A DNA stretch of 64,000 nt, from NCBI GenBank assembly GCA_038087875.1, contig CM075982.1, forward strand, positions 22,568,001-22,632,000. Reading direction: 5' to 3'. The stretch is from Malacoraja senta. Taxonomy: Eukaryota. Positions 3,625 to 63,105 of this stretch are shown piece by piece. Made by a program: the position numbers and the translations under genes. The notes beneath the pieces are model-generated. The model saw only the letters and a program-made list of their open reading frames with translations. It had not been told where the DNA came from and ran no database searches. Position 1 is the first letter of the stretch, and the number at the start of each line of letters is the position of its first letter.

Positions 3625-3770
3625 ATGTGTAGGAAGGCTCCAGCATTTTGTGTCTACCTTCGATTTAAACCAGCATCTCCAGTTCTTTCCTACACAAGGA
3701 ACTGCAGATGCTGGTTTAAACCGAAGATAGACACAAAAAGCTGGAGTAACTCAGCGGGACAGGCAGCATT
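3625..3770. repeat. Penelope-associated terminal repeat in fold-back arrangement
   Basis: ctccagcattttgtgtctaccttcgatttaaaccagcatct...cctacac followed by its own reverse complement ...agatgctggtttaaaccgaagatagacacaaaaagctggag. Confidence 0.7.
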
Positions 3771-7063: not shown

Positions 7064-8769
7064 ACCTCCAGGTAATGAGATGAAAACTGCTTTATCAATT
7101 GTAGTTCAATTCTGTTAGATTCAAAATGTATGCATGTGGAGTACATTCATATTAAATCTCTTTTGGTGGTCATCCGTCGACGGGGTGGAGAGGGGGATAA
7201 ATGGTGAGGTGTCCTTGTAGAGTCACGGGTTTTAATTTCACTCAATGTCCTTGAAAGAGGTTTTACAATCTGGCACACTCAGTGATTTATTGATAAATAC
7301 TCTGGATTATTGGATGTTATTCCAATTTATACTTCAACTTTTATTTCGCTTTTTAAAATGTTACAATGTGATAAATTTTCTAGCGACAAAAAGGTTGAGA
7401 GGGTCACGGAAATGGGGCTGTGAAGAGCTTAAAGGCAAAAGAGAAAACAATACAAGTTTCAAGAAAGTGTGGAAGTGGGGCAGTTGAGCACCAGATATGC
7501 TGGATGCTAAACATAGATATTTCTGAAAAATTGGCAGGTGGAATATCAGACATGTAAGAAGGAACTGGAGATGCTGGTTTAAACCAAAGAGTAACCGCTG
7601 AGTTACTCCAGCTTTTTGTGTCTATCTTCGGAATATCAGACATGTTGTTTCAGTTTGTAGGGCTGTGGGCATTGGCCAGTCAGTATCCTCCGATTGCTCC
7701 CGCGGTGTGTCTTATTTAGGTCACAAAATATTTTCTTTGAATCGAGTGTTTACTGATTGAGCTTTGTTAAATTGGACGGATGAAATGTCTGATGAAGAGG
7801 AAAGGCAGAATTTCTTTTGGACTGAAATTTATTGGCTGCGATCTTAATGCCAGCTTTGGTTAAGGGGTAGCTTCCTTGTTTCCAAGTCAGTTTCACGATA
7901 AATTAACTTTTCTTTGCATCTATTTGTGTAAATATATCATATTTATACCCATTACCGCGGTCCTGATTTTCCTCCTAGGAGAGGTAGGTAGCATTCTGTG
8001 ATTTTAAAAAATTCTACACAAAGCCCTTAGTCCAGATTGCCATTTCACTGTACTGAAGGAGTGCTGTAATCCCAGTGATGCTCTCTTTCAGATTAGACAT
8101 TGAATGAGTTGTCTTCTTAAATGAACATTTCGAATGCTAATGATGCTCAAGGATATTTTTCCTGGCTAATATTTATTGTTCAGCGACTAGTGGAAGATTG
8201 CAAATTTCTTATCCCAATTAATATATATTTAAACAATGCCTCCATTTCATAAGTATTCTCTGGTTACATAGAGAGAATAGAAAATACTCAAGACATTCAG
8301 CAGATCAAGCAGTATCTGTGGAAAAATAAACTTGATGTTTCAGGCCCGAAGACACCTGGACCTGAATTGTTAACTGTTTCTCTCTCCACAAATGATGCCT
8401 GGCCTGTTCAGTGTTTCCATTGTATGTTTTACATTTTAGATTTCTAGCCTGTGCAGTTTTTGTTTTATTTTGATGTACTTTGCTAAACACACACTGTAAA
8501 AGGACTTGTATGAACAGTGATAATTGTTAGACTAATTCTAATTTATCCTTTCTGTCGTCAAGGAAAGAGGGCACTGCTGTTTTAAAAAAAATTAACACCA
8601 CAGTTAATGTGTGAGATTGTGCAGATATTTATCTGATTATGGGACCAGGGTTTTTGAGGGAGAGAGAGAGAGGGAACTTTAATCTGCCAACTGTTGGTAC
8701 CCTCCAACTCGATGTCAGCAAAACAGAGGAAGTGGGTGGAGTACACGGCCCAGTCTGTATTAGCGCAAA

Positions 8770-9454: not shown

Positions 9455-10295
9455 TTTCAAGTTCAAGTTACATTTATTATCGCATGCACCAATTGGTGCA
9501 GCGAGATTTGAATTACCATACCCAATTGGTGCAGTGAGATTTGAATTACCATACAGCCATACGAATAAAAAGAACACAACACATGATAGAATTTAACATG
9601 AACATCCCACACAGCGGAATCGAGGTTTCCCACTGTGAGGGAAGGCAATAAAGTTCAGTCATCTTCCTCTTTGTTCACCTGTGGTCGGGGCCTTTGGGCC
9701 CTCCGCAGTCGCCCCTACGGCGGCCCGATGTTTCAGGCCCTCTCGCTGGGATAATCGGAACTCCGACGTCGGAACGGAAGAACACTCTCAGCGGCTTGGA
9801 GTTTCCGTATCCGCCACTTCTTACCGGAGACCGAGGCTCCCGAAGTCAACAGGCCAAGCTGGGAGGAGATTCAACACTGGTGAGGATCCCAGGACTCCGC
9901 GATGTTAAAGTTAGCCCCGCGGCTAGAAGCTCCGCAAACCACAGCTCCACGATGTTAAAGCAGCAGGCCCAACACTCCAGAGCCTCAACATGGCGATCCC
10001 CGGTAAGGCATCGCCCGCTCCGCGATGGTAAATCAGTGCTGCGCCGCTGCTGAAGCTCTGGCCGGTCTCCGGCAGGAAAGGCCGTGCCAATCCAGATGGT
10101 AGGCCGCGGGGGGTGGGGGGGGGGGCGAAGAAGCGACTCAGAGAATAGACGCATCCTTGACCAGGAAGTGACTGAGTCAAGTGACTATTGGCTGCTTTAA
10201 CATCCGGTTTCCGCCTTCCCCTCCCCACCTCCCCACATAAAAAACAGACAAAAAATAACAAAAAAGGTTAAATGACAAACAGACTGCTGGCGAGT
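9455..10295 (-). mobile_element. GC-rich non-autonomous retroposon with (TTGAAC)n tail, unclassified
   Basis: Minus-strand 3' end ...gataataaatgtaacttgaacttgaa. Both ends are shared with the copy at 37096-37790 and the tail with 49228-49360. Internal 33-bp tandem duplication at about 9488-9553. Confidence 0.65.
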
Positions 10296-11259
10296 GACTG
10301 AATGACCCGATGACTGAAATACTAGTAGTGATTTGTGAATTCCTTAAGGGAGAACTTTCGTTGCCTGAACTGCTGTAAAGCTGGGGTTATTGTGTGAATA
10401 AGCTTCACAGTTGCTTGTGCTGTACTGAGCTTGCTGGTCATAACAAAACTGAGTGGAAACGTATCCATACAGTGCGTAGTCAGTAAAATCCTCAGGAGTT
10501 CAAATACAGATTTTATTCTCTATGCAGAATGTTTTGAGATCTTGCACAACAGCACGATAATGAATCAGTGGTTACAGGCCTGTCATTCGGAGTGGAAGCA
10601 GTTTGTGGAAATGATTTAAGAATATTGCAAAACAAAAGTATCACATGCTGGAACATTGGCACAGATAGTTTTCTCTCCCTTATTGGCAGTGACTGCTGGA
10701 AAGGCACGACAAAGGAGTCAAAGGCTTTTATCTTACTTGGTCAGCCTGATATTCTATTTTTTCCCCTTCTATGAACAAGTTGTAGAATAAAAGGAACTGC
10801 AATAATCCTTTCAAAAGCAATTAACATCATATGTTCTCTACAGTAAGGTTTTATGATCAATTATGCTTTCATTTCAATCCCATTCAACTGCATGTCATTC
10901 TGTAGACCACAGTGTATGTATTTTAAGGCGGGTCTGGTAGTTGACTTCAGAGAAACTGATGTTCGTTTGCGGCCAACTTTATTAGCTAGGAAGTGCAAAT
11001 TTCAAAACCAAGATGTTTGAATCAGTCTTATGAAATATAGGCACTCCCCTACTTGTGTAATGGTTGACATGTGTAAACTCGCACAATGGCTGGTCCCGTT
11101 TCCTGAATTATCTGTTATTGCAAAAGGAGGATGGCAAGGGCTTCCCGTCTTCAGGATAGGAAAGCGTTACCTGTGCTCGCTACTCTTCCAGTTTAAGCCA
11201 CTGTTGGTGTAACACTGGAAAGGCGAGTGAGAACGAGGGAGGCAGTGGAGAGTAATTCC

Positions 11260-11480
11260 TCGCCGAGTCACTGACATCTTCCACAAGGTGCATTAGCGAG
11301 TGCTCCTTCACCAGCTGCCGCACCATCCAGCTGGCATGGCTGTTGTTGTGGCTCACGTTGTAGCCCCTGGCTGACAGCGCAGGGTTCAGGCCACAGACAG
11401 GACGCTCTCAGTCACCATGGAACTCCCCCCCACTAGCTGCAGCTTCTTCCACCACTGCCTCCTCCTCCTCCCCCCGTCGC
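11260..11480 (-). pseudogene. Linker histone H1-like globular-domain fragment (degenerate)
   Basis: Minus strand reads MVTESVLSVA, then after a frameshift/deletion ALSARGYNVSHNNSHASWMVRQLVKEHSLMHLVEDVSDS; compare H1 [40 protein letters not shown]. Confidence 0.6.
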
Positions 11481-11689
11481 TTTGTTTGTCCCCCCCTCTC
11501 CACTGCCGCCTCCACCTCCTCACCTGGAGTCACCAAAATCACTTTTGACAGTGGTGGAAGGGAGAGTGGCAAAGGTATTGATGATTTTGGGGGAGAAGTA
11601 GGCAACAGAAGAGGGGGGAGCGGACAAAGTGAAAGCCGACAAGAAGAAACAGTAACCAGTTAGAGGGAAGGGAGTCCTACAATGATAAA

Positions 11690-11782
11690 GCGGGTCATGT
11701 CCCTGGTGGTGGTTCGAAGAAAGTGCTGTTGGCCCGGGCTTCAACATGAGCCACAACAACAGCCGCGTCAACCGGGTGTGCC
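11690..11782 (+). pseudogene. Second H1-like fragment (degenerate), inverted relative to the first
   Basis: With frameshifts reads MSLVV / KKVLLAR / FNMSHNNSRVNRV. tgagccacaacaacagcc (11747-11764) is the exact reverse complement of 11338-11355. Confidence 0.55.
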
Positions 11783-11807
11783 ATCAGTGCCTAGTTTTAA
11801 GGTGAAA

Positions 11808-12020
11808 TTACACAAAATGCTGGAGGATAGTCAGGGAACATCTCTGGAGAACATGGATTGGTGATGTTTCGTGTCGGGGCCCTTCTACAGACTCGAAGGA
11901 TCCTGTCCAAAAATGTCACCGATCCATGTTCTCCAGAGGTGCTGCCTGACCCGCTGAGTTGCTCCAGCACTTCATATTATTTTATGTATTTACCAGAATC
12001 TGCAGTACTTTGTTTTTATC
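11808..12020. repeat. Back-to-back Penelope-associated terminal repeats
   Basis: acacaaaatgctggagg...gatgtttcg...ccttctacagac, then the inverse ...atgtcacc...gctgcctgacccgctgagttgctccagcac. Confidence 0.65.
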
Positions 12021-12289
12021 TACTAGTTTTAAGGTGATTCCGACTAGCATAAAATCGGATGTGCAAGGGTATACAGAACTTAATCCTTGTGCCTGTATTG
12101 CATATAGATGAAAAAACTTTCAACAGGCTGCTGGTATGTAAAGTGGTCAGTTCTTGCAAGAATTTGGAATTAATTAATTATAGCAAAGGATTAAATTTGC
12201 TGCAATTTTATCAGATAAAAGCTATTTCGAGCAGTTGGGTGGAGTGTCATTTAAGACTGGAACCTAAGTTCTCATTTTTCACGGTCATA

Positions 12290-12610
12290 AACATAGAACA
12301 GCACATGGATAGCACATTACAGCACATGGATAGGCTTTTCGGCCCACAGTGCCAAACATGATGCCAACATAAACTAAACTCATCTGCTTGCACCTGATCC
12401 TTATCCCTCCATATCCTGCATATTCATATGCCTATCTAAAAGCCTCTTAAATGCCACCATTATCTGCCTCCCCCACCAGCTTTCATGCACCCACCACTTA
12501 AAACGCCCCCCCCCCCCAAAAAAAAACCCACCTTGCACATCTCCTTTAAACTTTGCCACCCTCACCTTGAAGCTGTGCTTCTAGTCTTTGATATTTCCAC
12601 TACGGGTGAA
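12290..12610 (-). mobile_element. CR1-type LINE 3' fragment
   Basis: catagaacagcac...aggcttttcggcccac...taaactaa; typical reverse-strand CR1 3' region. Confidence 0.6.
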
Positions 12611-13679
12611 ATGCCTACTCCTTCTCATTTCCTTTCAACACACCACTTAAGCACAGTCATGTACCTTTGTTCCCACACATTTGTACCAGATCACAATCGT
12701 CGAAGCCCATGATCCCAGTTATATGTTAAAGCCCAAAGCACTGAATTTATTTAAGTTTGAGCAACTCTACTTGCGCACAGCACTGTGGCGGTGAAACACA
12801 CAGCGGTATTAAGCGATGTTAAGCTTGAGCATTTAAATTATCGTGGGCGGCTGTCTGATTGCCCCAGCTTGTACATTGTTGAATTCATCTGGTAAGGGAG
12901 GTTTTATGAGGAGGAGATAATTGGCAGATTCATTATCTCCTCTGATGTGAGAGGAGAAAAGGCTGCTGTATCTGCAGGCCAACTGGCAATTTCTTTCATC
13001 CCCCGCCACATTTGTAATTATATGAAAGCAGCAGAACAGATGAAGTGTGGGAGGGTAGTTCCCACATATCTGCTGTTGTCTGTCTTGGTATGGAGGACTC
13101 GGGCTTCGTGCATTGCTCCATTGCAATTAGTGGAAGCTGCACTGTCATTCTCTAAACACCTTTTATGTACTCGGCTCCCAAACCGTTGGTAGTGTGGGAA
13201 CAACGAAAAATGAAGGGAGTCAAATGTTCTTTAAGAACAAAAAGCATAGCCTCCTTGGGAATCAGACTCCAGCTATCAACCTTATCTATGCCCATCATAA
13301 TTTTATATCACCTCATTCGCTCGAGACAATTGCACTCAGCATCTATCTCATAACTCATAGTCCTCATAACTAAACTCAAAGCCCTCCTTCATGCAAAATC
13401 CCTGTGAATCTTTTCTGCACTCTCTTGACCTGAATCACATCTTTCCTGTAGCCTGGTGGCTAAAACTGTGTATAATACTCCAAGTGCGGCCTAACCATGA
13501 CAGAAGAGGTAATTTATTTTTGAAACAATCCCTTGCAGCATGAGTTTTTGAGTGCTGCTTAAAGAGTTCAAAATTTGAGGCGGACTGGACAATCAAGGTA
13601 GGGTTACTAAATCAAGACAATCAAGTGCTGGTTACTAAATGGCAGGAATGGATTTTCTACATAACATGTTTCAAACAAA

Positions 13680-13842
13680 TGTGTAAGAAAGTACTGCAGA
13701 TGCTGGTTTAAATCGAAGGTAGAGACAAAATGCTGGTGTAACTCAGCGGGACAGGCAGAATCTCTGGAGAGAAAGAATGGATGACGTTTCGGGTCAACAT
13801 CTTCTTCAGTCAGAAGAAGGGTATCGACCCGAAACGTCACTC
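13680..13842. repeat. Penelope-associated terminal repeat with an inverted pair of hammerhead-like motifs
   Basis: atgacgtttcgggtcaacatcttcttcagt|cagaagaagggtatcgacccgaaacgtcac forms an imperfect palindrome centred near 13810. Confidence 0.75.
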
Positions 13843-14439
13843 ATGTTTCAAACCATCCACTGTATTTAAACCTCAGCATGGATTACAAGGCTGTCCAAAT
13901 AAATCAAGTCAGGTTTATTGTCACATGCATAAGCACAGTGAAGTGCAGGCACAATTAAAATCTTGCTTGCAGCGGCATCACAGGTACATGGACTCAATTA
14001 ACGCACAAAAACAGGAATGTGTTAAATGATTGTCATCTGAGAACACTCTCAAATACACAGTCATTTTTTTTTTAAAGTTCAGGCACAGTTTTAATTTGGG
14101 TTTTACTTGTTTATATATTAAATTTGCTTGTTTGTAAAACTCGCCCTGCTCATTCTGTTGCAACAAAGTAGGCTCATTGATTGGAACCTTTGAAATGTTC
14201 TAAGTGGGGCACTCAACCACACAGATGAAAAGTTCAAAGATCAATGAGTTTGGATTGGTATCAGCTAACTAAAATGGAACATTTGTTAAATGGGGCCAAG
14301 TAATAAATGTGCAGTACAGAGCTATGCCCAGGAATATGGGGTTCCTGGTAAACTTTTGGATGAAATACAAAATGGGGATGTGCAGAAGAGTTAAACTAGG
14401 GGCGTTCCAGAATTCTTTGCCTCTGTCAATTGCCATTTG

Positions 14440-14710
14440 AGTCAGTCACACAACATGGAAACACATCTTTCAGCCCACCAAATGTACACTATTCATCGAC
14501 CACAGACATGCACAAATCCTTTTTTATTCACTCCATATTCTCATTAACTCTTCCAGATTCTACCCCTCAAATTCACATTGTGGCAATTTACGGAGGCCAA
14601 TTAACCTACTCGCATGTCTTTTTGCGATTTGGGAGGAAACCAGAACACCTGGAGGGAATCACTCTGCAATTTCCACACAATCAGCACCCAAGTTAGGAGT
14701 GAACCCAGGA
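14440..14710 (-). mobile_element. Degenerate HE1-type SINE
   Basis: ggccaattaacctac...gggaggaaaccagaacacctggagg is the reverse complement of the SINE core. Confidence 0.6.
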
Positions 14711-15929
14711 AACAATCAATTCAGGATGTGAGCTGAGGGATATCTCTATATGAAAGAACATCCCCCAAGAATGGTGAAATCAGTCGTGGAACAATAATTA
14801 TGGAGATCTCTTGCTTTTCTATTAGTAATCCTTTACATGAACTTATGAACTGCATCTTTTCTTTTGCTTTGGAGCACTCATTAAATGCAGTCTTAAAATA
14901 CTTGGTTAAAATTTAGAGATAATTTCATTTAGTTGGTCCCTATTTTCTATGTTTCATTACTTGACCTATTTAACATATTAAATGTCGGAAACATAAAAAA
15001 TGGAAGCTGAAATAGGGTATTCATCCTTTTACGCCTGCTCCATCATTAAATATGACTATGACTGATCTTCTATCTCAATGCTACATTATGGTCGTCTTTT
15101 GCGCCTGGAAATCTACCTATCTGTTCCTGAAATATATTCATTAACTTAGTCTCCAGGCTCTATGGTGGTTAATCCACAACAAAAAGCAGTGCTGGAGGAT
15201 GTCAGCTGGTCAGACACTATCTCAGGAAGGATATGGACATTGATGTTTCTGTAGAGACCCTTCCTCAGGACTGTAATTCATTGAATTGCCGAGATTCACG
15301 ATCCTTTGAGTGGAGAAATTTATCTTTACCTCATTGGATTCTTGCTTTGCATCCTGAGCATGTGCGCATGCACAGACTAACATACCATTTGTCTTCCTAA
15401 CAGTGTGTAGTACCTGCCTATATGACTGATGTACCAGTTCTTTCGAGTCTCTTTGTATGTTTCCTCATTAATCAATATATAAATAAAATTCTACCATTCT
15501 GCTCTTCCTAGCCAATTGAATAACCACACTTTGTCATGTTATACCTGCCGTATATAAAAGCCGTCGCCAGGTCACAAATGGGTTTTCTTTTTACAGAAAT
15601 CCATAAATCCATTTTGCCACTTGATATGATAACAATATTTACACAGTATGACAATGACTGGAACCAAAAGCGCAAATGATTGATACGGAAAAACATTTAT
15701 TGGAAGTGGAGAGAGAGAGATTAGTTCTGATGTTCATTTGAACAAACATGCAAGTGCATTGGACGTCCGAATTTAATAATATTACAGGCACTTGTTTGTA
15801 TATAAGGGTGACCTCAAGTCAGTTGTTTGTACAGCTTGTACTTACAAAATGTGTCTAAATACCTTGAAGCCTCTTCATCCTCCTCACAACATATAATCCC
15901 AGCCAAACAAAAGACAAAATAATGGAGTA

Positions 15930-18510
15930 GGTCAGGCAGCATCGCTGGGGAACATGGATAGGTGATGTTTCCGGTTGGGGATGTTTCTTGAGGGGGAGCA
16001 AACTGGAAATGTGGTGGGGATGGTACAAAGCCAGGCAAGTACATGTGGATGCAGGTGAGAGGGTTTTAATTGGCAGATGAGTGGACAAAGGCCAGAGATG
16101 GAAAGAAGACAAAAGGTTGTGAGATAAGGAGAGAAGTGAGAAATACAAAGCCAAAGGAAGGTATGTAGGTGGAAGGGGGTGGAGGGAAGGGGAAAGGGGG
16201 TTGGATAGTGGAAAAAATAGGTGGGGGCATGTGGAAGAGGGGGGGGAGAGAAAAAAAAGTTGTAAGCTACTGAAGTGGAATATGAGGTGCTGTTTTTACA
16301 ATTTGCGTGTAGCCACACTATGGCAATGGAAAGGTCAGTCTAGGAATGGGAAGAGAGTTAAAAATAGTTAGCAACCTGGAGATCCAGCAGGCCTTTGCAG
16401 ACCAAGCATAAGGTTTGGTGACAGTCGCCTCTTCTACACTTGGTTCCTCCAATATAAAGGAGGCCACATTGGGAGCACCAAACCCAATAGTTGATGTCTT
16501 CTATAAACCTGCTGCCTCCCACAATTATCTGGGCTACACCTTCTTCCATACTGCCTCTTGTAAAAACGGACTGCATGCCTGACTTTCAATTCCTCCATCC
16601 CTGCTGCTTTTGCACCCAAGATGAAGCTTTCCACTCAAAATGTCCTCATTCTTTAGTAAATGTGGTTTTCCCCCTGCTGTCATAGATAGATCCCTCGCCC
16701 ATGTCCTCTGTGTCCCGTATTTCTACTCTCGTTTCCCCCCTCCCCGAGGATAGAATTTCCCTGGTCTATGCCTTTCACCCCATCAGTCTCTGCATCCGAC
16801 ACATTCTCCAACATTTCCGCCACCTTCAATGTGATCTCGGCACCAGTCACATCTTCCCGTCCCCACCTCTTTCTGCAGAGGCCACTCCCTTTGCAACTCC
16901 TTGGTTCAGTCTTCCCTTCCCACCCAAACCATCCCACCCCCACATCCCTTCCCTGCAAGCACAGGAGAGGTAACAAGTGTACATATACCTCCTCTCCCTC
17001 ATCCATCTAGGGGCCCCCACAGTCCTTTCAGGAAAGATAGAGATTCATGTGCACCTCTAATCTCATCTACTGTATTCGGTGCTCCTTGTATGACCACCTT
17101 CACGTTGGCGACACCAAGTGTAGACTAGGCGATCATTTCACTAAACCTTTAAGAAGGGATTGCAGATGCTGGAAAAATCGAAAGTAGACAAAAAAATGCT
17201 GGAGAAACTCAGCGGGTGAGGCAGCATCTATGGAGAAAAGGAGTAGGCGACGTTTCGGGTTGAGACCCTTCTTCAGACTGATGTTGGGGCGGGCGGGAAA
17301 AAGAAAGGAAGAGGCGTAGACAATAGGCTATGTGGGGGAGGGGAAGGAGGGAGAAAGCAAGGACTACCTGAAATTGGAGAAGTCAATGTTTATACCGCTG
17401 GGGTGTAAACTACCCAAGTGAAATATGAGGTGGTGTTCCTCCAATTTGCGCTGGGCCACACTCTGTCAATGGAGGAGGCCCAGGACAGAAAGGTCAGATT
17501 CAGAATGGGAGGGGGAGTTGAAGAGTTGGGCAACCGGGAGATCAGGTTGGTTAGTAAAGACTGAGCGGAAGTGGTGGGCAAAGTGGTCGCCGAGCCTACG
17601 CTTGGTCTCGTCGATGTAGAGAAGGTTACACCTACGACAGTGGATGCAGTAGATGAGGTTGGAGGAGGTGCAGGTAACCTCTGCCTCACCTGGAAAGACT
17701 GTTTGGGTCCTTGGATGTAGTCAAAGTAACAAGTGGAACATTTCCTGCGGTTGCAGAGGAAAGTACCAGGGGATGGGGTGGTCTGGGTGGGACGGGATGA
17801 ATCTGCTCAGTCCACCAAGGCCTGCTGGATCTCCCAGTTGCTAACCATTTTAAATCCCCTTCCCATTTCCATACCGACCATTTTGTTGTGGGCCACCTCC
17901 GTTGTCATAGAGATGCCACACGCAAGCTTGTAGGAGGAACAGCAAATCGTATTCTGCTTGAGTAGCTGACAACCCAACAATGTGAATATTGAATTCTCCT
18001 ATTTTGGGTAATTAACTAACCCCCCCCCCCCTTTTTTATCCCCTTCTCTTCCCTGTGCTCCACCTGGATGTGCACCTATTTCTCGCACTACCCCATTCCC
18101 TTCCACCTCCATCCCTTCGTCTGTCTTCACACTTTGCGCCTCGTCTCCTTATCTTGTACCGCTGCTGGCAAATTCATTGTACCGCTGCTGGCAAATTAAT
18201 TTCACTTGCACGTTATGTTCAAGTGACGAATAAAACTGATATTGATATTGTAGCCTTTCAACTTCTTCCCATCTCTGGCCTTTGTCAACTCATCTGCCTG
18301 TCAAAACCCCTTCACCTGAATGCATGTCTCACTTGCCTGGCCTCGTCCTGCCCTCAGCTTTCTTTGTCCTACTACAATAAGTCTATAACAACTTTCTACC
18401 CCCGACTACAATCAGTCTGAAGAAGTTCCAGGCCGAAACGTTGCCTATCCATGTTCCCCAGAGACGCTGTCCTGACTCGCTGAGTTCCTCCCGCAGTTTG
18501 TATTTTGCTT
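15930..18510. mobile_element. Cluster of Penelope-like element fragments in alternating orientation
   Basis: About 15930-16480 (-), 16500-17140 (+), 17160-17790 (-) and 17810-18510 (+). GIY-YIG-type remnants (CSQCGLLYIGGTKCRRGD; LIYCIRCSL) and ISLVYAFHP...HILQHFRHLQCD...HIFPSPPL. Confidence 0.85.
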
Positions 18511-18879
18511 ATAAATATTACATTCAGCTCCCTTATCTGAATCATTGAAGTGCATTGTGAATAGATATTAATATTACAAAACCAATAATGTTTTAAGATA
18601 AGCTTTCTGCACATATCAAATTGCAAGGGACCAAACAATGACCTGTAGATTTAAAAATAGATGCTACATGTGTGAATAGAAACACAGATTCCTCTGAGTC
18701 CAAAATCTGCTTTTGAATAAAGTATCTTGAAGTTGTCAGTTCTATGAATATGGAGAACAATTGGGCACCATTACACCCAGCAGCTAACTGGCTAAAATGC
18801 CAATTTTCTCTGCAAGTTAATGTTCAATTTTTTTGCATTTGTCCAATGCATCAGCTCATCAAACGTAAGCTGCAAGGAA

Positions 18880-19125
18880 TGTATATTTAGACACAAAATG
18901 CTCGAGTAACTCAGCAGGACAGGCAGCATCTCCAGCGTTTTGTGTCTAACTTTGATTTAAACCTGCATCTGCAGTTCCTTCATGCACATATTGTCTGCTC
19001 CACTGCGAAATTGACTCAAGGTATGTCTACCTTGAAGAAGTACATTCCTTCTCTTCAGAGATGCTGCCTGTCCTGCTTTTACTCCAGCATTTTAAACCAG
19101 CATCTAAAGTTCCTTCATACACAGC
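18880..19125. repeat. Penelope-associated short terminal repeats
   Basis: agacacaaaatgctcgagtaactcagc..., and gatgctgcctgtcc...actccagcattttaaaccagcatct. Confidence 0.6.
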
Positions 19126-19179
19126 ATTGTATATTTGTCTGACTATCCAACGGCAGTGTTGGATGTGAAAATTTCTCCA

Positions 19180-19428
19180 ATGATGGGGAGGCGGGGGCGC
19201 AGAGGGAAGGAGGCGGTGGATGCGGCACCAGCACCCCCTCAGGCTGGCCCAGCACTGGATAAGGGAGCAATGGTGAAGAAGAGGCGGCGGCAGCAACAAC
19301 AACCGGCTCAGCCGCAGCCCCAGTCAGTGCAGCTGCCCAAGAAGGCCCACCGTCACCGAGCGCGTCTTGTCGGTGGCGGCGTCCAGCAAGCAAGCAGAGG
19401 CACGGCATCTCGCTGGCCGCGCTCTCGG
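19180..19428 (+). pseudogene. Linker histone H1-like gene fragment (N-tail plus start of globular domain), frameshifted, running into the assembly gap
   Basis: A/P/K/R-rich segment (EAVDAAPAPPQAGPA...KKRRR...PKK), then PTVTERVLSVAASSK from 19346, then QRHGISLAAL at 19395-19424 once a 4-bp caag duplication is removed; compare H1 PSVSELIVKAVSASKERSGVSLAAL. Confidence 0.65.
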
Positions 19429-19604
19429 NNNNNNNNNNNNNNNNNNNNNNNNNNNNNNNNNNNNNNNNNNNNNNNNNNNNNNNNNNNNNNNNNNNNNNNN
19501 NNNNNNNNNNNNNNNNNNNNNNNNNNNNNNNNNNNNNNNNNNNNNNNNNNNNNNNNNNNNNNNNNNNNNNNNNNNNNNNNNNNNNNNNNNNNNNNNNNNN
19601 NNNN
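19429..19604. other. Assembly gap (176 N)
   Basis: Run of n characters. Confidence 1.
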
Positions 19605-20905: not shown

Positions 20906-22862
20906 CAGGGCTCTCACTTCTTTTTTCCCTGATGCCAGCCGGGCAACCTAGACAGCTTTTTAGGTTGCCAAATGACGGTTCAGGTGGTCATTACATGCAT
21001 GACGCGTGTGATAATGTGCTCGGATGAAGTGCGTAGTTACCAGTCGGAATTATGCTCAATGAAGCATTCACATATTATTTCTGCTTCAAATAAAGTCACA
21101 AACTAAACATATTCACCAATCAAGACATGATATATACCATAATGACATGCAGCAAAATTATAATACAGTATCTCAACTCTTTTTACACATTGCAATGAAT
21201 GCAATTTCTATTATTTCTTTCCACTTCCAAACAAAAATGTGGTTGGATTATTCAGCGTATGATCAACCTGTGTCAATAAATCCTGGACCATGGTAACATA
21301 TATGCTTAACCATGCACACTACAGATTGATGCAAGCATGTTTTCTGTGAAGGACACGGCCATAGCATGGGTCGTTATTGCTATTGGTACAGAAACACTCT
21401 CGCTTCCCACATAATTTATCCACAACAAAATATACAGGTTGCAAGGAAATTTTTAAAGGCATTTTATGATAATAGCTGTTAAAACTGACTATACCCATCT
21501 GACAGGTTAAATATTACACTAACTGACAAGAGATGGCCAAAGGACATAACTGCAGCAAATGTTCTTTTGGTAATATGTTTAAAGGTGTCAAAACGCCACA
21601 TTACCGGACATTCAGATTAGATTATGTTTCCATCATTCCCAATTCAGAATTAACGTTAAAATTTAAACTGAAATATCTCCTGAGCAAATTTGTGATGTAT
21701 ATGACTGACTGTAGAAGTAAAACCTGGATAAATCCAACGTTTCGTGAATGTTGCTCATTAAATAACTACAGTACTGATACTCCATATTAAGAGCATTGAT
21801 TTGCCGTTAAAATGAATTCTGTAATAACATGTCAACCGTAGCAGTGACAATCGAACACTGCGGTTTTAATGTTTCACGTGTTCACAATTTAATTAATCCA
21901 TCTTTATGGATTAAAACAAACAATGGGGGGAGCAGTGCATGATGAATGGGAGGAGCAGTGCAGGATGGATGGGAAGGGGGGTCAGTACAGGAGGAATTGG
22001 GGGGCCAGTGTCGGATGGATGGGGGGTGGCATGAGAATCAATGTGAGGTTGATAGGGAGATCAGTGCAGGATGAATAGATGGGGGGGGGGGGGGTATATG
22101 GGGGGGGGAGCACAGGGTATGCCAGTGAGGACTGAATAGAGGCAGGAATGGGGATCAGTGTGGGATGGAGAGGAGGGGTCCCAGGATAAAGGGGGGCGGA
22201 GGGGGGCGTACAAGAGAGAGAGAGGGGGGGGGGGGTGGGGAGGAAGGAAGGTCAGCATTCCTCGGACATCACCGGCATCATCGCCCCGCTGCCTTGGCCG
22301 TCCCTGTCCACCGCCAAGTGCTGCCGCCAAAGGGGGAGGCAGTTGGGATCTCCTCGCCACTGCCTCCCCTCCTCCGCCAGCCAACAGGAAGGTGCGGGGC
22401 TGAGCGGTGCAGGTGCTTCAGACGGCAGAATGGGGCCTCCCCCTTCTCCGCCCCCCTTCCTCTCTCCTGCCGGCCTCGGCGTGCGGGAGGGTTTGTTTTG
22501 AAAGCGGTTATTGCCGTTGGCGGAGTGGCAAGCAGCGGCCACTATCAGGGCCGGCGGGGTGCGGGAGGAGGTGGAACCGCTGCTGCTGTACGGGCCCGTC
22601 ATTCGCTCCGACCCTCCGTCACCCCGCACCTAGTATCTTTCCCCGCACTACTGCCGCCACCGCCGCTGACACAAAACGTCACTTATTCCTTTTCTCCAGA
22701 GATGCTGCCTGACCCGCTGAGTTACTCCAGTTTTTTGTGTCTATCTTCGGTATAAACCAGTATCTGCAGTGCCAAGCCGGGCAAAATGACTCTGCATTTA
22801 GGTTGCCCGGTGGCACTTTAGGTGACCATTGGCACCCAGGCAACTGCTAATTTCGAGCCCTG
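20906..22862. mobile_element. Non-autonomous DNA transposon with TIRs and 5-bp TSD (hAT5-like)
   Basis: Ends CAGGGCTC...GAGCCCTG; subterminal inverted motif gccagccgggcaacct / aggttgcccggtggc; TSD TGTTG at 20901-20905 and 22863-22867; no transposase ORF. Confidence 0.82.
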
Positions 22863-27960: not shown

Positions 27961-28953
27961 ACACTTCTTCCCACCCTGCTTCCTGTAAGGACTCCATCCC
28001 CCACTCCCAATCCTCCGTCTACGCCGCACCTGCTCCCAGGATGAGGCGTTCCACACCAGGGCATCCAAAATGTCCTCATTCTTCAGGGAACGGGGGTTCC
28101 CCTCCTCCACCATAGATGAGGCTCGCACCAGGGTCTCTGCCATACCCCGCAACATTGCTCTCTCTCCCCATCCCCCCACTCACAACAAGGGCAGAGTCCC
28201 CCTAGTCCTCACCTTTCACCCCACCAGCCATCACATACAACAAGTGATCCTCCGTCAGTTTCGCCACCTCCAACGTGACCCCACCACTCGCCACATCTTC
28301 CCATCTCCCCCCATATCTGCCTTCCGCAAAGACCGCTCCCTCCGTAACTCCCTTGTCAATTCCCTTGCAACCGCAAGAGATGCAACACTTGTCCCTTCAC
28401 CTCCCCCCTCGATTCCATTCAAGGACCCAAGCAGTCGTTCCAGGTGCGACAGAGATTCACCTGCATCTCCTCCAACCTTATCTATTGCATCCGCTGCTCT
28501 AGATGTCAGCTGATCTCGGCGGCTTGGCGATCGTTTCGCCGAACACCCCCGGTCGGTCCGCAATAACCTACCTGACCTCCCGGTGGCTCAGCACTTCAAC
28601 TCCCCCTCCCATTCCGTATCTGACCTCTCTGTCCTGGGTCTCCTCCATGGCCACAGCGAGCAACACCGGAAATTGGAGGAAATGCACCTCATATTCCGCA
28701 TGGACAGTCTACATCCTGGGGGCATGAACATTGAGTTCTCCCAACTCTGCTAGCCCTTGCTGTCCCCTCCCCTTCATCAGCCCTCTGGTTGTCTCCTCCC
28801 ATCCCCCAGCCCTCGGGCTCCTCCGCCTTTTTTCCTTTCTTCTCCCCACCCCCTATCAGTCTGAAGAAGGGTTTCGGCCCGAAACTTTGCCTATTTCCTT
28901 CGCTCCATAGATGCTGCTGCACCCGCTGAGTTTCTCCAGCATTTTTGTGTACC
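27961..28953 (+). mobile_element. Penelope-like element: RT end, GIY-YIG endonuclease region and terminal repeat
   Basis: YTSSHP..., RVPLVLTFHPTS..., FTCISSNLIYCIRCSRCQL..., RLGDRFAEH. Flanked by the near-duplicate ttgtaatg(g/c)agact at 27947-27960 and 28954-28967. Frameshifts and internal deletions present. Confidence 0.9.
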
Positions 28954-36339: not shown

Positions 36340-36495
36340 GTCTGAAGAAGGGTCTCTACCCAAAACGTCACCCATTGCTTCTTTCCAGAGATGTTGCCTG
36401 TCCCGCTGAGTTACTCCAGCTTTTGATGTCTATCTTTGGTTTAAACCAACATCGGCAGTTCCTTCTTACACATTCCTGATATCTGCAGTTGCCTA
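36340..36495 (+). repeat. Penelope-associated terminal repeat
   Basis: tctgaagaagggtctctacccaaaacgtcaccc...gctgagttactccagc...ttaaaccaacatc. Confidence 0.7.
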
Positions 36496-37044: not shown

Positions 37045-37850
37045 ATAGGAGCAGAATTAGGCCATTTGCCCATCAAGTCTACTCCACCATTCAATCAAGT
37101 TCAAATTACATTTATTGTCACATGCACCAATTGGTACAGTGAGATATGAGTTACCATACAGCCATACGAATAAAAAAGAGCACAATACACGATAGAATTT
37201 AACATGAACATCCCCACTCAGCGGAATCAACGTTTCCCACTGTGAGGGATGGCAATAAGGTTCAGTCAGCCTCGCGAGCAACACCGGAAATTGGAGGAAA
37301 TGCACCTCATATTCCGCTTGGGCAGTCTACATCCTGGGGGCTTGAACATTGAATTCTCCCAATTCTGCTAGCCCTTGCTGTCCCCTCCCCTTCATCAGCC
37401 CTCTGGTTGTCTGCTCCCCTCCCCCAGCCCTCGGGCTGCTCCTCCGCCTTTTTTCCTTTCTTCTCCCCACCCCCTATCAGTCTGAAGAAGGGTTTCGGCC
37501 CGAAACGTTGCCTGTTTCCTTCGCTCCATAGATGCTGCTGCACCCGCTGAGTTTCTCCAGCATTTTTGTGTACCTTCGGAGTTATAAAGTTCAGTGCGAC
37601 TCGGAGAAAAGGCGCATCCTCAACCAGGTAGTGACTGAGAAACGGTTTCCCCTCTTCCCCCTCCCCACCCCTCACATAAAAAGACTAAATAACCTCCAGG
37701 AACATACATTTTTGATAGACTAAAAATAACAAAAAGGATAAAAGGACGGACAGACTGCTGGCAAGGCTGCTGCGAGTAGCGCCACTCGATGACGTCATGG
37801 CTCTATCTATCTCTTCCTCCTAACCCCATTCTCCCCATAACCCCTTACAC
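37045..37850. mobile_element. Nested composite: CR1 tail containing a GC-rich retroposon containing a Penelope 3' fragment
   Basis: CR1 tail broken at ccattcaatca (about 37096) and resuming at tcatggct (about 37796). Inside is a copy of the 9455-10295 element, itself interrupted at about 37270-37577 by a fragment nearly identical to 28655-28953. Confidence 0.8.
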
Positions 37851-40485: not shown

Positions 40486-40620
40486 CAGTCTGAAGAAGGG
40501 TCTTGATCCAAAACAACATCCATTCCTTCTCTCCAAAGATGCTGCCTGTCCCACTGAGTTACTCCAGCATTTTGTGTCTATCTTCGATTTAAACCAGCGT
40601 CTGCAGTTCTTTCCTACACA
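40486..40620 (+). repeat. Penelope-associated terminal repeat
   Basis: cagtctgaagaagggtcttgatcc...gatgctgcctgtcccactgagttactccagcattttgtgtctatcttcg. Confidence 0.72.
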
Positions 40621-43600
40621 TCCTGCTCTACATGCCCTTGGGTTAGGGAGTTAAAAGCTGCACAGGCTTCCTAATCTCAAGGCAGTGCACCTTGGTGTAT
40701 GATGTCTGATTTGACTGAAGAATGGATTTGTTCCTGATGCCAGCATTGAAAATGCAGACTTGCAAATGAACCAAGGCTAATGATGCTGGTGTTCAAATGC
40801 ACCTACTGCAAACTCAAAATTTTTTGAAGAGAACTTCACACACTTTAAATTTAAAAAAAAAAAAAAACTGTTTGCCATCATTAATTATTGTAAGTCATTT
40901 AATTAAATCATATAGCAGCGATTGGAACAAGCTTGCATTAACCTACAGTAGATCTTTACGATATCATGAGGAAAATGTTTTTGTTATGTGACTAATATTT
41001 ATGCTGGACATCAAGGGAACCCAGTTTTGAAACTGTCATTGTTCATTATTAATTTTCATATTTGCAGGCAACTGGCTAATATCACTGTCCTGTTCTTGTA
41101 TGTGATGTTATAAAATTCTAGAGTCTCGAAACTAATAGTGTAATACAGGATAGGAACAAGCCATACAGCTCACCATATCCATACTAACCAAAATAATGTG
41201 TGAATTACTTGAGTTGATAACATGTTGCAACCCAGTGAAAACGTCATCTCATTTCTGAAGGCTACAGTCTATACACGAACACTCCAATGATACAATCAGC
41301 TGTGAAAGCTTGGAAGCATCGATTTTTGTTGTGATCAGTTTCCAAGTGATTGTCGTCCTCTTCTAACATTTAATTAAGAGTAGCATCTCTTTTTTGTAGA
41401 ATGCAATTATTACTCTGCCAAACCCAAATCTAATAATTTAGCATTGGCAAATGCTAAGTGGTGTGAAAATCAAACATAGTGTGGACAAGAATAACTGGAT
41501 TAGCCTCTGTCTGGAATTATCCTTGGCCCCTATTGGTAGTGTGTCTACCCACACCATTGAAGTCCAGGCACTCAGTTTAATACCCAAATTTCCTCCACCA
41601 CATGAGTAGTGGAAACTCATTCAGTGCACCCAGAATGAACAAAGCCAGGGAGCAAGTTGAACGACTCTTCATTTGCTGGAATTACATATGGTACTTGGGG
41701 TTTTCATCACTTTAGTGGAGCTTCCATCACTTGGAGTTTCCATACACTTAAAAAAGACCCTAAAATCGTGCCGGTTCCTCATTATCTTATGTGAAATATT
41801 TCTATAGTATGAGTGGGAATTTGCAGACTTTACATTTTCTGACATTACTACTGAGGCTTTTTTCATTCCTTATTTTCCCTTCAAGACGTGATGGTCCCAT
41901 GTAGCCAAATCGCTCTGTGTCACTGACGGTTGCAATTGATATGGTGAGGAAGGAAAACTACTGGGGCAAATTACAGGCATGGAGCCTTCATGACTTTGCG
42001 ACATCAGCTGGGTTACGCACTGACACAAGATCTGTTGAGAAGAGATTATTCTCTCTTACAAAAGCACACTGAGGTGCAACAACACTTGATTCCTTAAACT
42101 TTACAGTCTAAATGTGAACATCAACATGGGAATTTATCCCCTGATATAATTTTGTTTTATAATCCATATTTTCTAGTCCAGTGTTACATTCAAATATTTC
42201 TGCAAATTTTCCGTTCAGTGGTTTTGGATTAATTGTATTTTGTCCTATATTGGTTAACACACTGAAATATTTTATGCAGAAACCCCCTGACTCACCTCCA
42301 GTTGCTGGTCAAAAGCTAAATTTCCTTTTGAGAAAATAAAAGCTTCATTTTATATCATCTCCACTCCCACTCATCTCCTGGCGAGTGAACTGTTTGCAGA
42401 TTTAAAATAAAACCATTTACAAAATGAATTTACAGTGAGACCTTCTCAGGCAGAAGAGGATACAACACAATCATTTCTGTTTCCTGTACAATGGTTATCA
42501 GCATGAATAACTTTCAATATAAGCCTGCCCTAGTTATGTTCCTTCAGTTCCCTGACCTGAAAACTTGCAGAAGTGTTGATGGAATGTGCTCTGAATCTGA
42601 AAATAAAGATTGAAAAAAGAAATGTATGGAGCTGAGAAAATACTTCACAATTTCATAGTGTGCAAAAGCAGATTTACCATATTCCACAGACTCCTTGTGA
42701 TCAGAAGCTTGTCTCAAATTGAGAGAACATACCAAAAATGGGAAACCGTAAGCCTTCAGTGTCTGTGGAGTGGTTTTAAAATAAACTTCAATACTTGTTC
42801 TAATGTCTCAATGTTCCATAAATGACCTGCTCAGTTCCCCCAAGTTCAAAATATCCTCTATGCAATTATATGTTCTATGCAATTGAGTTACAGGCTGTAA
42901 TTCTTGTCGGTAGTCTATCCAATTTTGGTCAAACTAGCTTGCATTCTTTTGTCACCATTAAACGGCAGTGAGGAATGACATTAAACGCTGGCATTTGCCA
43001 AAATTGCTCACATTATGGTTGTTAAGAGTGTAGTATTTATGGACTAACATCCAGAGTTCTGGATCATTGGTCCAGAGACACGAGTGAATCTCACTGGGGA
43101 GCATAGGGAACATTGAATTCAAAGAGTTTTTTTTAAATCTAGAATTTAAAAAAAGCAATTAATCTTTGTAATGGCAGCCGTAAAACTACTATTCAAAAGT
43201 TCACCTGGTTTGTAAGAAAGCAGCTACTCTCCGGTCTGGCCAGAGTTATCGATTATGGATGACTTCTATCAGCTACCTCAATGGTGGTTAATAAATGGCC
43301 ATAATTTTGTCATTGACGTCCATATCCCAAGAATAAACAAATGTTGTTCTTGGACAAAAAAAAGCCAAGGGAAGAGCTGCTTGGGAAAACTTGGCAGAAT
43401 AGGTCGTTAGTGAACAAAATTCACAGATGTTTTCCAGGTTTCTTTTCCAGGCCATGCATTGCTGTTTACAGAACACCCAGAAACCAAGTTCGGCATTATC
43501 CAGTGTCGCTGTCGTCAAGACAGGACAGCGGTTCTGAGTTCAAGAGTTTTTTTGTCTTCAGTCAGGGTGTTTCCAGGATACCAGACTCGCCTCCAAGTCT

Positions 43601-52159: not shown

Positions 52160-52258
52160 GGGAATGTAGACAAAAATGCTGGAGAAACTCAGCGGGTGAG
52201 GCAGCATCTATGGAGTGAAGGAATAGGTGATGTTTCGGGTCGAGACCCTTCTTCAGAC
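52160..52258 (-). repeat. Penelope-associated terminal repeat with hammerhead-like motif
   Basis: Nearly identical to 17185-17278; minus strand reads gtctgaagaagggtctcgacccgaaacatcacc. Confidence 0.78.
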
Positions 52259-62221: not shown

Positions 62222-63105
62222 AGGGTGGCACAGTCGCGTTGTGGTATATCTACTTGTCTTACAGCGCCAGAAACCCAGGTTCTGCTGCCTGTATGGAATT
62301 TGGACGTTCTCCTCTGACCGCATGTGTTTTCGCTGTGTGCTCCAGTTTCCTCCCACACTCCCAACGACATACAGGTTTGTAGGTTTTTTAGGAAGGGACT
62401 ACAAATGCTGGTTTACACCGTAGATAGACTCAAAATGCTGGAGTAACTCAGCGGGACAGGCTGGATAGAGTATTTGCAGCAGGCAGGTGGGAAGAAGTGT
62501 AGTCTCGATAGTTGTGGGAGTCAGTAGTTTTATAACGGGCTTCAATCGATAGTTTATCTCCTGTGATCAAGAAAGGGGAGGGAGGTGTCAGAGATGATCC
62601 AAGTGAATTTGAGTGCAAGATGGAAATTGGTAGTGAAGTTATGAAGTCCTTGAGTTCTGCGTGGGTGCAGGAGGTCGCATCAATGCAGTTGTCAATCTAG
62701 CGGAGATAGAGTTTGGGGACAGGGTCAATGTATGCCTGGAACAGGGATTGATCAGCGTACCTTACAAAGAGGCAGGCGTAGCTAGGGGCCAGACGAGTTC
62801 CCATGGCTACGCCTTGGATTTGGAGGAAGAGAGAGGAGTCGAAGGAGAAATTGTTGAGAGTAAGGACCAGCTTCACTTGGTGGATGAGAGTGTTGGTAGA
62901 GGGTGGATAGAGTCTTTGCAGGAGGCAAGGAGCCTGTCCTGAGTTTCTCCAGCATTTTGTGTCTATCTTCAGGCTGTAGGTTAATTGGCTTCGGTAAAAA
63001 TGGTAAATTGGGGTGCTAGAACGTAGGATAGTGTTAGTGTACGGGGTGATTGCTGGTTGGCATGGACTCGGTGGGCCGAAGGGCCTGTTTCGCACTGTAT
63101 CTCTT
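62222..63105 (+). mobile_element. HE1-type SINE split by a minus-strand Penelope RT fragment (about 62390-62970)
   Basis: The SINE 5' half ends ...acaggtttgtaggtt and resumes caggctgtaggttaattggc. The insert encodes LVLTLNNFSFDSSLFLQIQGVAMGTRLAPSYACLF...YLR (Penelope RT). Confidence 0.85.

What the first reader, a model, noticed from the sequence alone, without database searches (positions are those of the whole stretch)
11260..19428. Dispersed linker-histone-H1-like fragments in FLOT2 intron 1: a possible H1-derived repeat family
Seen: three GC-rich islands in AT-rich intron encode overlapping parts of one divergent protein. At 19180-19428 (+) there is a basic/Pro-Ala N-tail, then PTVTERVLSVAASSK-QRHGISLAAL. 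At 11260-11480 (-) there is VTESVLSVA...ALSARGYNVSHNNSH...LVK. At 11690-11782 (+) there is SL..KKVLLAR.FNMSHNNSRVNR. Known: these follow the H1/H5 (H15) winged-helix motifs 'PSVSELI..AV.ASKERSGVSLAALKKAL...[10 protein letters not shown]'. The copies share unusual residues (VTE.VLSVA; N.SHNNS), pointing to one non-canonical H1-variant source. Inference: three broken copies within 8 kb, away from any histone cluster, suggest an H1-like gene (perhaps a germline or protamine-like variant) amplified as an interspersed repeat by retroposition or transposon capture. The ORF track hides this because of frameshifts.
Basis: partly seen in the sequence, partly recalled or inferred. Interest (0 to 1): 0.75.

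Follow-up and report, generated by a model that had tools for sequence, protein, structure and literature searches.

The report
Dead histone-H1 foldback repeat copies
Three GC-rich islands upstream of a skate-like FLOT2 exon are decayed, non-coding relics of a dispersed repeat built from the front half of a linker-histone H1 gene, two of them being the two arms of one hairpin; a curiosity of genome history, with no sign of present function.

Summary
There are two loci, not three copies. At 11195-11805 two H1-like fragments lie head to head: start codons face each other across a 38-base spacer, and the stretch folds as one long hairpin (z -5.4). At 19180-19428 a solo fragment runs into a 176-N run. 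Pfam finds no H15 domain in any piece. The H1 origin holds through an intermediate. The best piece matches P0001, an unnamed ORF from public run assemblies, at E 2.9e-14. P0001, and a family profile, then hit only H1 globular domains among solved structures (E 1.8e-4 and 1.1e-3). P0001 reads antisense through one arm and sense through the other, as in this window, so the foldback is a family trait and was not made here. P0001 stands for ten mosaic variants, and a second ORF, P0002, is a further copy, so this is a dispersed family. The scan had already noted the same family elsewhere in this genome. Retroposition is not supported: the 5' end is kept, the lysine-rich tail and poly(A) are missing. 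Carriage by a DNA transposon is plausible but not shown here, because no convincing terminal repeats were found. No parent gene was found, and copy number and expression could not be measured.

The parts
11195..11542 (-). Arm A of the foldback: H1-derived fragment. It holds a start-codon equivalent (GTG, 11542-11540), a GC-rich N-tail, helix I (VTESVLSVA, 11389-11415), an internal loss of 11-13 codons plus a frameshift, helix II-III (LNPALSARGYNVSHNNS...LVKEHSLMHLVEDV, 11273-11389), and a non-lysine tail (..PLPPSFSLAFPVLHQQWL) shared with P0001.
   Evidence: frames and coordinates. (P0001, E 2.9e-14). (62% identity over 65 aa to P0001; 67% over 36 aa to P0002). (top solved-structure hit is chicken GH1, E 0.56).
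11085..11194 (-). Non-H1 sequence distal to arm A that is still shared with another family copy (P0002). It is part of the repeat unit, not of the histone domain.
   Evidence: P0002 residues 65-126 align to 11267-11085 in a shifted frame (34% identity; this piece alone E 0.01). Weak beyond 11085.
11543..11580 (.). 38-base spacer at the centre of the foldback, between the two facing start codons.
   Evidence: sequence. (the fold centres here).
11581..11805 (+). Arm B of the foldback: the same H1-derived fragment in the opposite orientation. It holds ATG 11581, N-tail, PTMIKRVMSLV (11676-11708), SKKVLLAR, and GFNMSHNNSRVNRV (11737-11778). It has the same internal deletion as arm A, several frameshifts and stops, and is cut distally by an insertion.
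   Evidence: local alignment to the reverse complement of A: score 86 against shuffles 23 +/- 3.3. (I9). (alignment). (P0001 sense part 54% over 24 aa; the P0001 N-terminal part matches the antisense of this arm, 11747-11589).
11806..12022 (.). Later insertion into arm B: a 217-base foldback copy of the window's most abundant short repeat, flanked by a perfect 15-base target duplication (CTAGTTTTAAGGTGA at 11791-11805 and 12023-12037).
   Evidence: (I7, D2).
19180..19428 (+). Solo fragment C. It holds ATG, a 56-codon basic/Pro/Gln-rich N-tail, helix I (PTVTERVLSVAASSK), and then KQRHGISLAALS after a 4-base CAAG duplication. It has two frameshifts. It keeps the codons that A and B lack. It is cut by the N run.
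   Evidence: (three-way alignment around helix I). (best non-self hit of the A/B profile, E 0.3). One search shows the GH1 segment ERKGLSLAALKKAL, to which QRHGISLAAL corresponds.
19429..19604 (.). Run of 176 N that hides whatever follows fragment C. By rule it was not filled or looked up.
11029..11044 (+). Candidate left terminal inverted repeat (TA|TGAAATATAGGCAC), paired with 12089-12104. At chance level, so a lead only.
   Evidence: 14 of 16 bases complementary; about 0.1-0.3 such pairs expected by chance..
12089..12104 (-). Candidate right terminal inverted repeat (GTGCCTGTATTGCA|TA), partner of 11029-11044. At chance level.

Best explanation
The islands are dead, neutrally decaying copies of a dispersed repeat family of a skate-like cartilaginous fish. 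The family's cargo is the 5' part of a linker-histone H1 gene: a few dozen bases of leader, the start codon, the N-terminal tail and the winged-helix globular domain, without the lysine-rich C-terminal tail.

In the family's usual form two such pieces lie head to head, start codon against start codon, making a foldback. The locus at 11195-11805 is one such foldback. It arrived as a unit, lost 11-13 codons of helix I-II before or at the time of folding (both arms share the loss), decayed to about 57-67% arm identity, and was later hit by a short retroposon-like foldback. The locus at 19180-19428 is a much more distant solo 5' fragment of the same H1 type that still has the codons A and B lack. 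Nothing here codes for protein.

Shown:
- H1 origin, through intermediate sequences.
- Foldback anatomy.
- The same anatomy in an independent copy.
- More copies outside the window.
- Coding decay.

Inferred:
- The pieces were spread by a non-autonomous cut-and-paste DNA transposon (Pack-type/MITE-like) or a self-standing foldback element, not by reverse transcription.
- Fragment C belongs to the same family and is not an independent pseudogene.
For: - H1 origin. The piece 11183-11407(-) matches P0001 at E 2.9e-14 in 1.84 billion representatives. P0001 against solved structures gives H1 globular domains as its 8 best hits (GH1 E 1.8e-4; H1.1-H1.4 E 0.008-0.012). A five-sequence family profile hits only H1 (8 of 8, best E 1.1e-3). 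The piece alone already ranks GH1 first (E 0.56).
- Foldback. Arms align at score 86 against shuffles 23 +/- 3.3. The 515-nt RNA fold is a single hairpin, -221.9 against -182.5 +/- 7.3 kcal/mol, z -5.4. Both arms begin with (A/G)TGATTTTGG.
- Family trait. P0001 is collinear with the window's minus strand. Residues 50-101 match the antisense of arm B (11747-11589, E 0.009 window-wide). Residues 107-171 match the sense of arm A (11389-11195, E 6e-20).
- Dispersed family. P0001 stands for 10 variants on 10 contigs of about 0.9-1.06 kb. They differ at 1-12 of 171 residues, with a mosaic pattern: 50 of 91 informative site pairs show all four combinations. P0002 is a further copy with a different 5' break.
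- No coding constraint. Identity to P0001 is about 60% inside and about 64% outside the H1 domain (read from the alignment). Stops and frameshifts occur in all fragments.
- Against retroposition. The start codon is kept; the lysine-rich tail and poly(A) are absent.
Against: - Pfam Linker_histone does not hit any piece, nor P0001 or P0002.
- No bona fide H1 protein reached E 0.001 in the large search, and no parent gene was found.
- The link of C to A/B is weak at DNA level (E 0.3), so C could be an unrelated pseudogene of the same gene.
- No significant TIR or TSD bounds the foldback, and no transposase domain lies nearby.
- Copy number in this genome was not measured. The species of P0001 and P0002 is unknown, so they are not proven to come from this genome.
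Confidence: 0.7

Rival explanations
1. The fragments are retroposed (processed) pseudogenes of a germline H1 variant mRNA, amplified by LINE machinery.
For: The fragments are intronless, GC-rich and dispersed. The window is full of retroposon-derived short repeats.
Against: All three fragments keep the 5' end (start codon and some leader) and lack the 3' part, the lysine-rich tail and poly(A). LINE-mediated copies are typically 5'-truncated and keep the 3' end. The head-to-head arrangement recurs in an independent copy, which retroposition does not explain.
Confidence: 0.07
2. The fragments are ordinary local pseudogenes: an H1 gene copy once sat here and was broken by an in-situ inverted duplication and deletions. 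There is no mobile family.
For: Two H1-derived loci lie within 8 kb. No TIR or TSD was found. C retains codons that A and B lack, as expected if C is closer to a local source gene.
Against: P0001 (10 variants) and P0002 are only 59-62% identical relatives, carry the same non-H1 flanking sequence, and P0001 has the same antisense-sense architecture. Earlier notes of this scan report the same pair at other places in this genome (leads, not checked here). C and A/B are too diverged for a recent local duplication.
Confidence: 0.12
3. Fragment C is the first part of a real, still functional H1-variant gene. Its frameshifts are assembly errors next to a gap, and A/B are unrelated relics.
For: C has an ATG, a 56-codon open N-tail typical of H1, and a canonical-length helix I-II. 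Sequence beside gaps in GC-rich DNA is error-prone (general knowledge).
Against: There are two frameshifts within about 80 bases, one a clean 4-base duplication. No protein in 1.84 billion representatives matches the family as an intact H1. The sequence after the N run is AT-rich and unrelated.
Confidence: 0.06
4. The resemblance to H1 is chance, arising from short GC-rich open frames.
For: Pfam finds nothing. Single pieces give E 0.56 at best against solved structures. Piece C gives no H1 hit.
Against: The transitive link is significant at both steps. The profile hits H1 exclusively. Helix I and helix II-III motifs occur in the right order and orientation in both arms.
Confidence: 0.03

Closest known systems
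Pack-TYPE transposons (Pack-MULE, Pack-CACTA) of plants: non-autonomous DNA transposons carrying captured host gene fragments (PMC8903248, PMC6379663)
   Same: A host gene fragment (here the 5' half of an H1 gene) is multiplied as part of a non-coding repeat unit. The copies decay without coding constraint. The cargo is flanked by non-genic sequence shared between copies.
   Different: No TIRs, target duplications or partner transposase were shown here. The host is a cartilaginous fish, where such capture is little documented: no paper was found with the terms searched. The cargo is folded head to head.
Foldback elements and inverted-duplication relics of DNA transposons
   Same: Two long inverted arms with a short spacer. 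The whole unit folds into one hairpin. The same arrangement occurs in another copy.
   Different: The arms are made of host gene sequence meeting at the start codons, not of transposon ends. Arm identity is now only about 57-67%.
Linker histone H1/H5 globular domain (Pfam PF00538; chicken GH1 1ghc; human H1.1-H1.4)
   Same: Order and spacing of the motifs P.V.E...V.ASK.R.G.SLAAL ... AL.A.GY.V..NNSR....L..LV match. Only H1 chains are hit by the family profile.
   Different: There is no open reading frame, no lysine-rich tail, and an 11-13 codon loss in A and B. Pfam's own profile does not reach threshold. The residues (VTE.VLSVA; N.SHNNS) match no H1 protein retrieved.
Processed histone or H1 pseudogenes
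   Same: Intronless gene-derived sequence away from a histone cluster.
   Different: The 5' end is kept, the 3' end is lost, and there is no poly(A). The architecture is a foldback.

Membership tests
Linker histone H1/H5 (H15) domain, as sequence origin | Significant match to an H15 profile or to H1 globular domains | tested here: met
   Met only indirectly. Pfam gives no hit for the pieces, P0001 or P0002. The related copy P0001 (E 2.9e-14 to the window piece) hits GH1 at E 1.8e-4 and seven further H1 chains. The family profile hits only H1, best E 1.1e-3.
Linker histone H1/H5 (H15) domain, as a functional gene | Uninterrupted ORF through the three-helix winged helix | tested here: not met
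   Frameshifts and stops in A, B and C. A and B lack 11-13 codons between helix I and II.
Linker histone H1/H5 (H15) domain, as a functional gene | Lysine/alanine/proline-rich C-terminal tail after the globular domain | tested here: not met
   After the domain A reads ..YSPLPPSFSLAFPVLHQQWL, and the DNA is not AAG/AAA-rich. The downstream part of C is under the N run.
Pack-type / MITE-like DNA transposon with captured gene fragment | Terminal inverted repeats at fixed ends | tested here: inconclusive
   Local alignment of the flanks is at shuffle level. One 16-base pair (11029/12089, 14 of 16) is near chance expectation.
Pack-type / MITE-like DNA transposon with captured gene fragment | Target-site duplication of fixed length (such as TA) | tested here: inconclusive
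   TA adjoins both candidate ends, but TA is too short to weigh and the ends themselves are unproven.
Pack-type / MITE-like DNA transposon with captured gene fragment | Many dispersed copies with unrelated flanks | tested here: inconclusive
   Copies outside the window exist: the P0001 cluster of 10 mosaic variants and P0002 with a different 5' junction. Earlier scan notes list at least 4 other loci, unchecked.
Pack-type / MITE-like DNA transposon with captured gene fragment | Cargo recognisably derived from a host gene | tested here: met
Processed pseudogene / retrocopy | 3' end of the mRNA with poly(A) kept; 5' truncation | tested here: not met
   The start codon and leader are kept in A, B and C. 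There is no 3' part and no A-rich end.
Foldback repeat | Two long inverted arms folding into one hairpin, recurring between copies | tested here: met
   (this locus). (P0001 reads the antisense arm and then the sense arm).

The most novel reading that the evidence does not exclude
The H1 foldback family may be, or may once have been, a source of hairpin-derived small RNAs (endo-siRNA or piRNA) against the parental H1 variant. Copies inside transcribed introns such as this one would supply the double-stranded precursor. That would make transposon-borne gene fragments a regulator of a linker histone in cartilaginous fish. Younger copies, such as the roughly 95%-alike P0001 variants, would be the active ones. 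The copy in this window is too decayed (57-67% arm identity) to serve.
Probability: 0.04. Interest if true: 0.7.

Novelty: new member of a known kind. Interest (0 to 1): 0.33.

Why it matters
If the family is carried by a DNA transposon, it would be a vertebrate case of host-gene-fragment capture and amplification, a process described mainly in plants (Pack-TYPE elements). The cargo, a chromatin protein folded into a hairpin, could in principle feed RNA silencing. For annotation, the result is practical. These GC-rich islands are repeat relics and should be masked. They are not histone genes, nor exons or regulatory islands of FLOT2. This window adds two more, very old copies to a family the scan had already met elsewhere in this genome, and it shows that the foldback centre lies at the start codons here too.

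Tried and rejected
- Pfam on five pieces and on P0001-P0003: no Linker_histone hit.
- Word-index protein search with the 75-aa piece, and with P0001 residues 100-171: nothing but the query itself. Because of the tool's length limits, this says little about longer proteins.
- Large representative search: P0003-P0005 passed E 0.001 only by summing weak matches to internal repeats, so they are spurious.
- ESM Atlas on P0001 96-152: no usable hit.
- Solved-structure search with the two C pieces: no H1 hit.
- Search for TIRs around the foldback: at shuffle level.
- The post-gap sequence ..AGTTGAAGCATCG.. looked like a Tc1-type end, but it has no partner in the window.
- Further H1-like fragments elsewhere in the 64 kb: none.
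- Transposase or any Pfam domain in ten ORFs between 9.7 and 22.8 kb: none.
- Rfam and tandem repeats in 9-21 kb: nothing relevant.
- Literature: no paper on linker-histone-derived repeats in skates with the terms tried.
- The N run 19429-19604 was left as it is.
Full report
**1. What is in the sequence**

- Fragment C (+ strand) starts with ATG at 19180 and reads a 56-codon basic, Pro/Gln-rich tail. It then needs a frame change for PTVTERVLSVAASSK (19346-19390) and another for KQRHGISLAALS (19392-19427). The second change follows a 4-base CAAG duplication. It stops at a run of 176 N (19429-19604), which I left untouched.
- Fragment A (- strand) holds VTESVLSVA (11389-11415). After a stop and a frame change it reads LNPALSARGYNVSHNNSHASWMVRQLVKEHSLMHLVEDV (11273-11389).
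- Fragment B (+ strand) holds PTMIKRVMSLV (11676-11708), SKKVLLAR (11714-11737) and GFNMSHNNSRVNRV (11737-11778) in three frames.

The islands are GC-rich (0.55-0.59) in a 0.35-0.40 background. Other GC-rich stretches nearby are not H1-like. No further fragment exists in the 64 kb.

**2. Two loci, not three copies**

A and B are the arms of one inverted repeat.

- The repeat finder reports a 43-base core pair (I9).
- A local alignment of B with the reverse complement of A scores 86 against 23 +/- 3.3 for shuffles.
- Both arms begin with the same (A/G)TGATTTTGG. This is GTG at 11542-11540 on the minus strand and ATG at 11581 on the plus strand, so the two start codons face each other across a 38-base spacer.
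- As RNA, 11290-11804 folds into a single end-to-end hairpin: -221.9 kcal/mol against -182.5 +/- 7.3 for shuffles, z -5.4, with no shuffle as good.
- The arms are old, at 57% identity overall and about 67% in the core.
- Both arms lack the same 11-13 codons between helix I and helix II that C and canonical H1 retain. The loss therefore predates or accompanied the folding.
- Arm B is cut at its distal end by a 217-base insertion (11806-12022) with a perfect 15-base target duplication.

**3. Is it H1?**

Pfam gives no family at E up to 10 for any piece. The word-index protein search is blank. Against solved structures, the 75-aa piece of arm A ranks chicken GH1 first and human H1.1 third, but only at E 0.56 and 1.4. 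The C pieces give no H1 hit.

The large representative search (1.84 billion proteins) found two true relatives:

- P0001: 171 aa, E 2.9e-14, 62% identity.
- P0002: 210 aa, E 3.5e-6, 59% identity.

Three other hits are artefacts of internally repetitive proteins.

P0001 and P0002 are unnamed ORFs from assemblies of public sequencing runs. P0001 is less decayed than the window copy, and its eight best matches among solved structures are all H1 globular domains (GH1 E 1.8e-4; H1.1, H1.3, H1.4, H1.2 at 0.008-0.012). A profile of five family sequences hits H1 chains and nothing else (8 of 8, best E 1.1e-3).

The H1 origin of helix II-III is thus supported by a two-step chain that is significant at each step. 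Helix I has no independent statistical support. It rests on three points:

- Its position upstream of helix II-III in both arms.
- The shared motif P-T-[VM]-[TI]-[EK]-[RS]-V-[LM]-S-[VL] in A, B and C.
- The fit of C's QRHGISLAAL to the GH1 segment ERKGLSLAAL shown.

The best matches are somatic-type H1, not H5/H1.0. No intact parent protein was found. This absence is weak evidence, because the library keeps one representative per 50% cluster and the word search has length limits.

**4. A family whose unit is the foldback**

tblastn of P0001 against the window shows collinearity with the minus strand:

- Residues 50-101 match the antisense translation of arm B (11747-11589; 38% identity, E 0.009 for the whole window, 2e-4 locally).
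- Residues 107-171 match the sense translation of arm A (11389-11195; E 6e-20).

So the P0001 locus also reads from one arm, backwards, into the other arm, forwards. The head-to-head pair is inherited, not made at this locus. In P0001 the sense arm lacks the N-tail and helix I, so its arms are asymmetric.

At 59-62% amino-acid identity these are paralogous copies, not the same locus of a close relative. Their species is unknown.

P0001 represents ten 171-aa variants, each on its own contig of 0.92-1.06 kb. They differ at 1-12 residues in a mosaic pattern: 50 of 91 informative site pairs show all four combinations. This is what a young multi-copy subfamily gives in short-read assemblies.

P0002 has a different 5' break, with unrelated sequence up to ..RGHNVSHNNS. 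It extends the shared sequence beyond the H1 part to window position 11085.

Identity between the window copy and P0001 is the same inside the H1 domain (about 60%) as outside it (about 64%), as read from the alignment. This indicates neutral decay.

Earlier notes of this scan describe the same head-to-head H1 pair at other places in this genome, inside TA-flanked TIR elements, and in one case centred on a palindrome over both start codons. I treated these as leads. What I could test here agrees: the head-to-head pair, and the centre at the start codons. What I could not test is the transposon ends.

**5. How it spread**

Retroposition is unlikely. All three fragments keep the start codon and some leader. 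They lack everything after the globular domain: there is no lysine-rich tail, no AAG/AAA-rich DNA and no A-rich end. LINE-made copies usually keep the 3' end instead. A recurring foldback is also not a retroposition product.

A cut-and-paste carrier or a self-standing foldback element fits better, but in this window the case is open.

- Flank-to-flank alignment is at shuffle level.
- The one candidate pair of ends (TA|TGAAATATAGGCAC at 11029 and its complement at 12089-12104|TA, 14 of 16) is near chance expectation.
- No ORF between 9.7 and 22.8 kb has a transposase domain.

If the candidate ends were real, the unit would be about 860 bases without the later insertion. That is of the order of the P0001 contig lengths, but this remains an inference.

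**6. Fragment C**

C is only distantly related to A/B at the DNA level. It is the best non-self hit of the A/B profile in the window, in register at helix I, but at E 0.3. Pairwise z is about 4. It has no partner arm. Just upstream lie copies of the abundant short repeat (18885-19123), and downstream lies the N run.

C may be an older or different-subfamily member, or an independent pseudogene of the same H1 variant. Two frameshifts in about 80 bases argue against a live gene, unless they are assembly errors beside the gap.

**7. Context**

FLOT2 exons are on the + strand at about 23.6 kb (GGCCGSDHKQYVIGGWAWAWWC), 45.06 kb and 61.26 kb. The MGNC... first coding exon was not found in the first 24 kb. 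'Intron 1' is therefore plausible but unverified.

**8. Limits**

- Nothing under the N run was sought.

**9. Verdict**

The H1 origin and the repeat-family idea hold. The retroposition and germline-variant ideas are unsupported. The carrier is unproven here.

This is a further, very old pair of copies of a family the scan already knows. It is a new member of the known kind 'repeat carrying a captured host gene fragment', and of modest interest.

Noticed in passing
window 11806-12022; also 13720-13840, 15179-15253, 15908-15980, 17186-17281, 18885-19123 and at least 10 further sites (3638-3769, 7553-7628, 22685-22773, 28895-28950, 36373-36473, 37516-37571, 40521-40621, 47995-48030, 52164-52224, 62392-62969): A very abundant short repeat (core ..GCTGGAGTAACTCAGCGGG.CAGGCAGCATCTCTGGAGAA..GACGTTTCGGGTC.AGACCCTTCTTCAGACTGA) that often sits as a foldback of two copies. 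The copy inside arm B has a perfect 15-base target duplication. Earlier scan notes call such elements Penelope-derived and hammerhead-bearing. The reverse strand does read CTGAAGA...GAAAC, but I did not test the ribozyme.
   Followed up: partly
window 16046-18324: A complex 2.3-kb structure of inverted and direct repeats (arms 16046-16494 against 17804-18324 inverted; 16261-16330 against 17404-17473 direct) with GC skew flipping four times (+0.68, -0.51, +0.40, -0.44). It lies between the two H1 loci. ORFs there have no Pfam domain.
   Followed up: partly
window 9600-10200: A GC-rich (0.58-0.60) block with repeated ..CTCCGCGATGTTAAAG.. units and a G18 run, flanked by a 33-base tandem duplication at 9489-9554. 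ORFs on both strands have no Pfam hit. Whether it is a repeat or a CpG island was not decided.
   Followed up: partly
P0001, P0006-P0014 (public run assemblies): Ten 171-aa ORFs stay open although they read antisense through one H1 arm and sense through the other. They are about 95% alike with mosaic differences. This suggests a young, possibly still transcribed subfamily in some cartilaginous fish. Their source runs could not be identified.
   Followed up: partly
window 23626, 45060, 61263 (+): FLOT2 exons were recognised by motif. The first coding exon (MGNC...) is not in the window upstream of 24 kb.
   Followed up: partly
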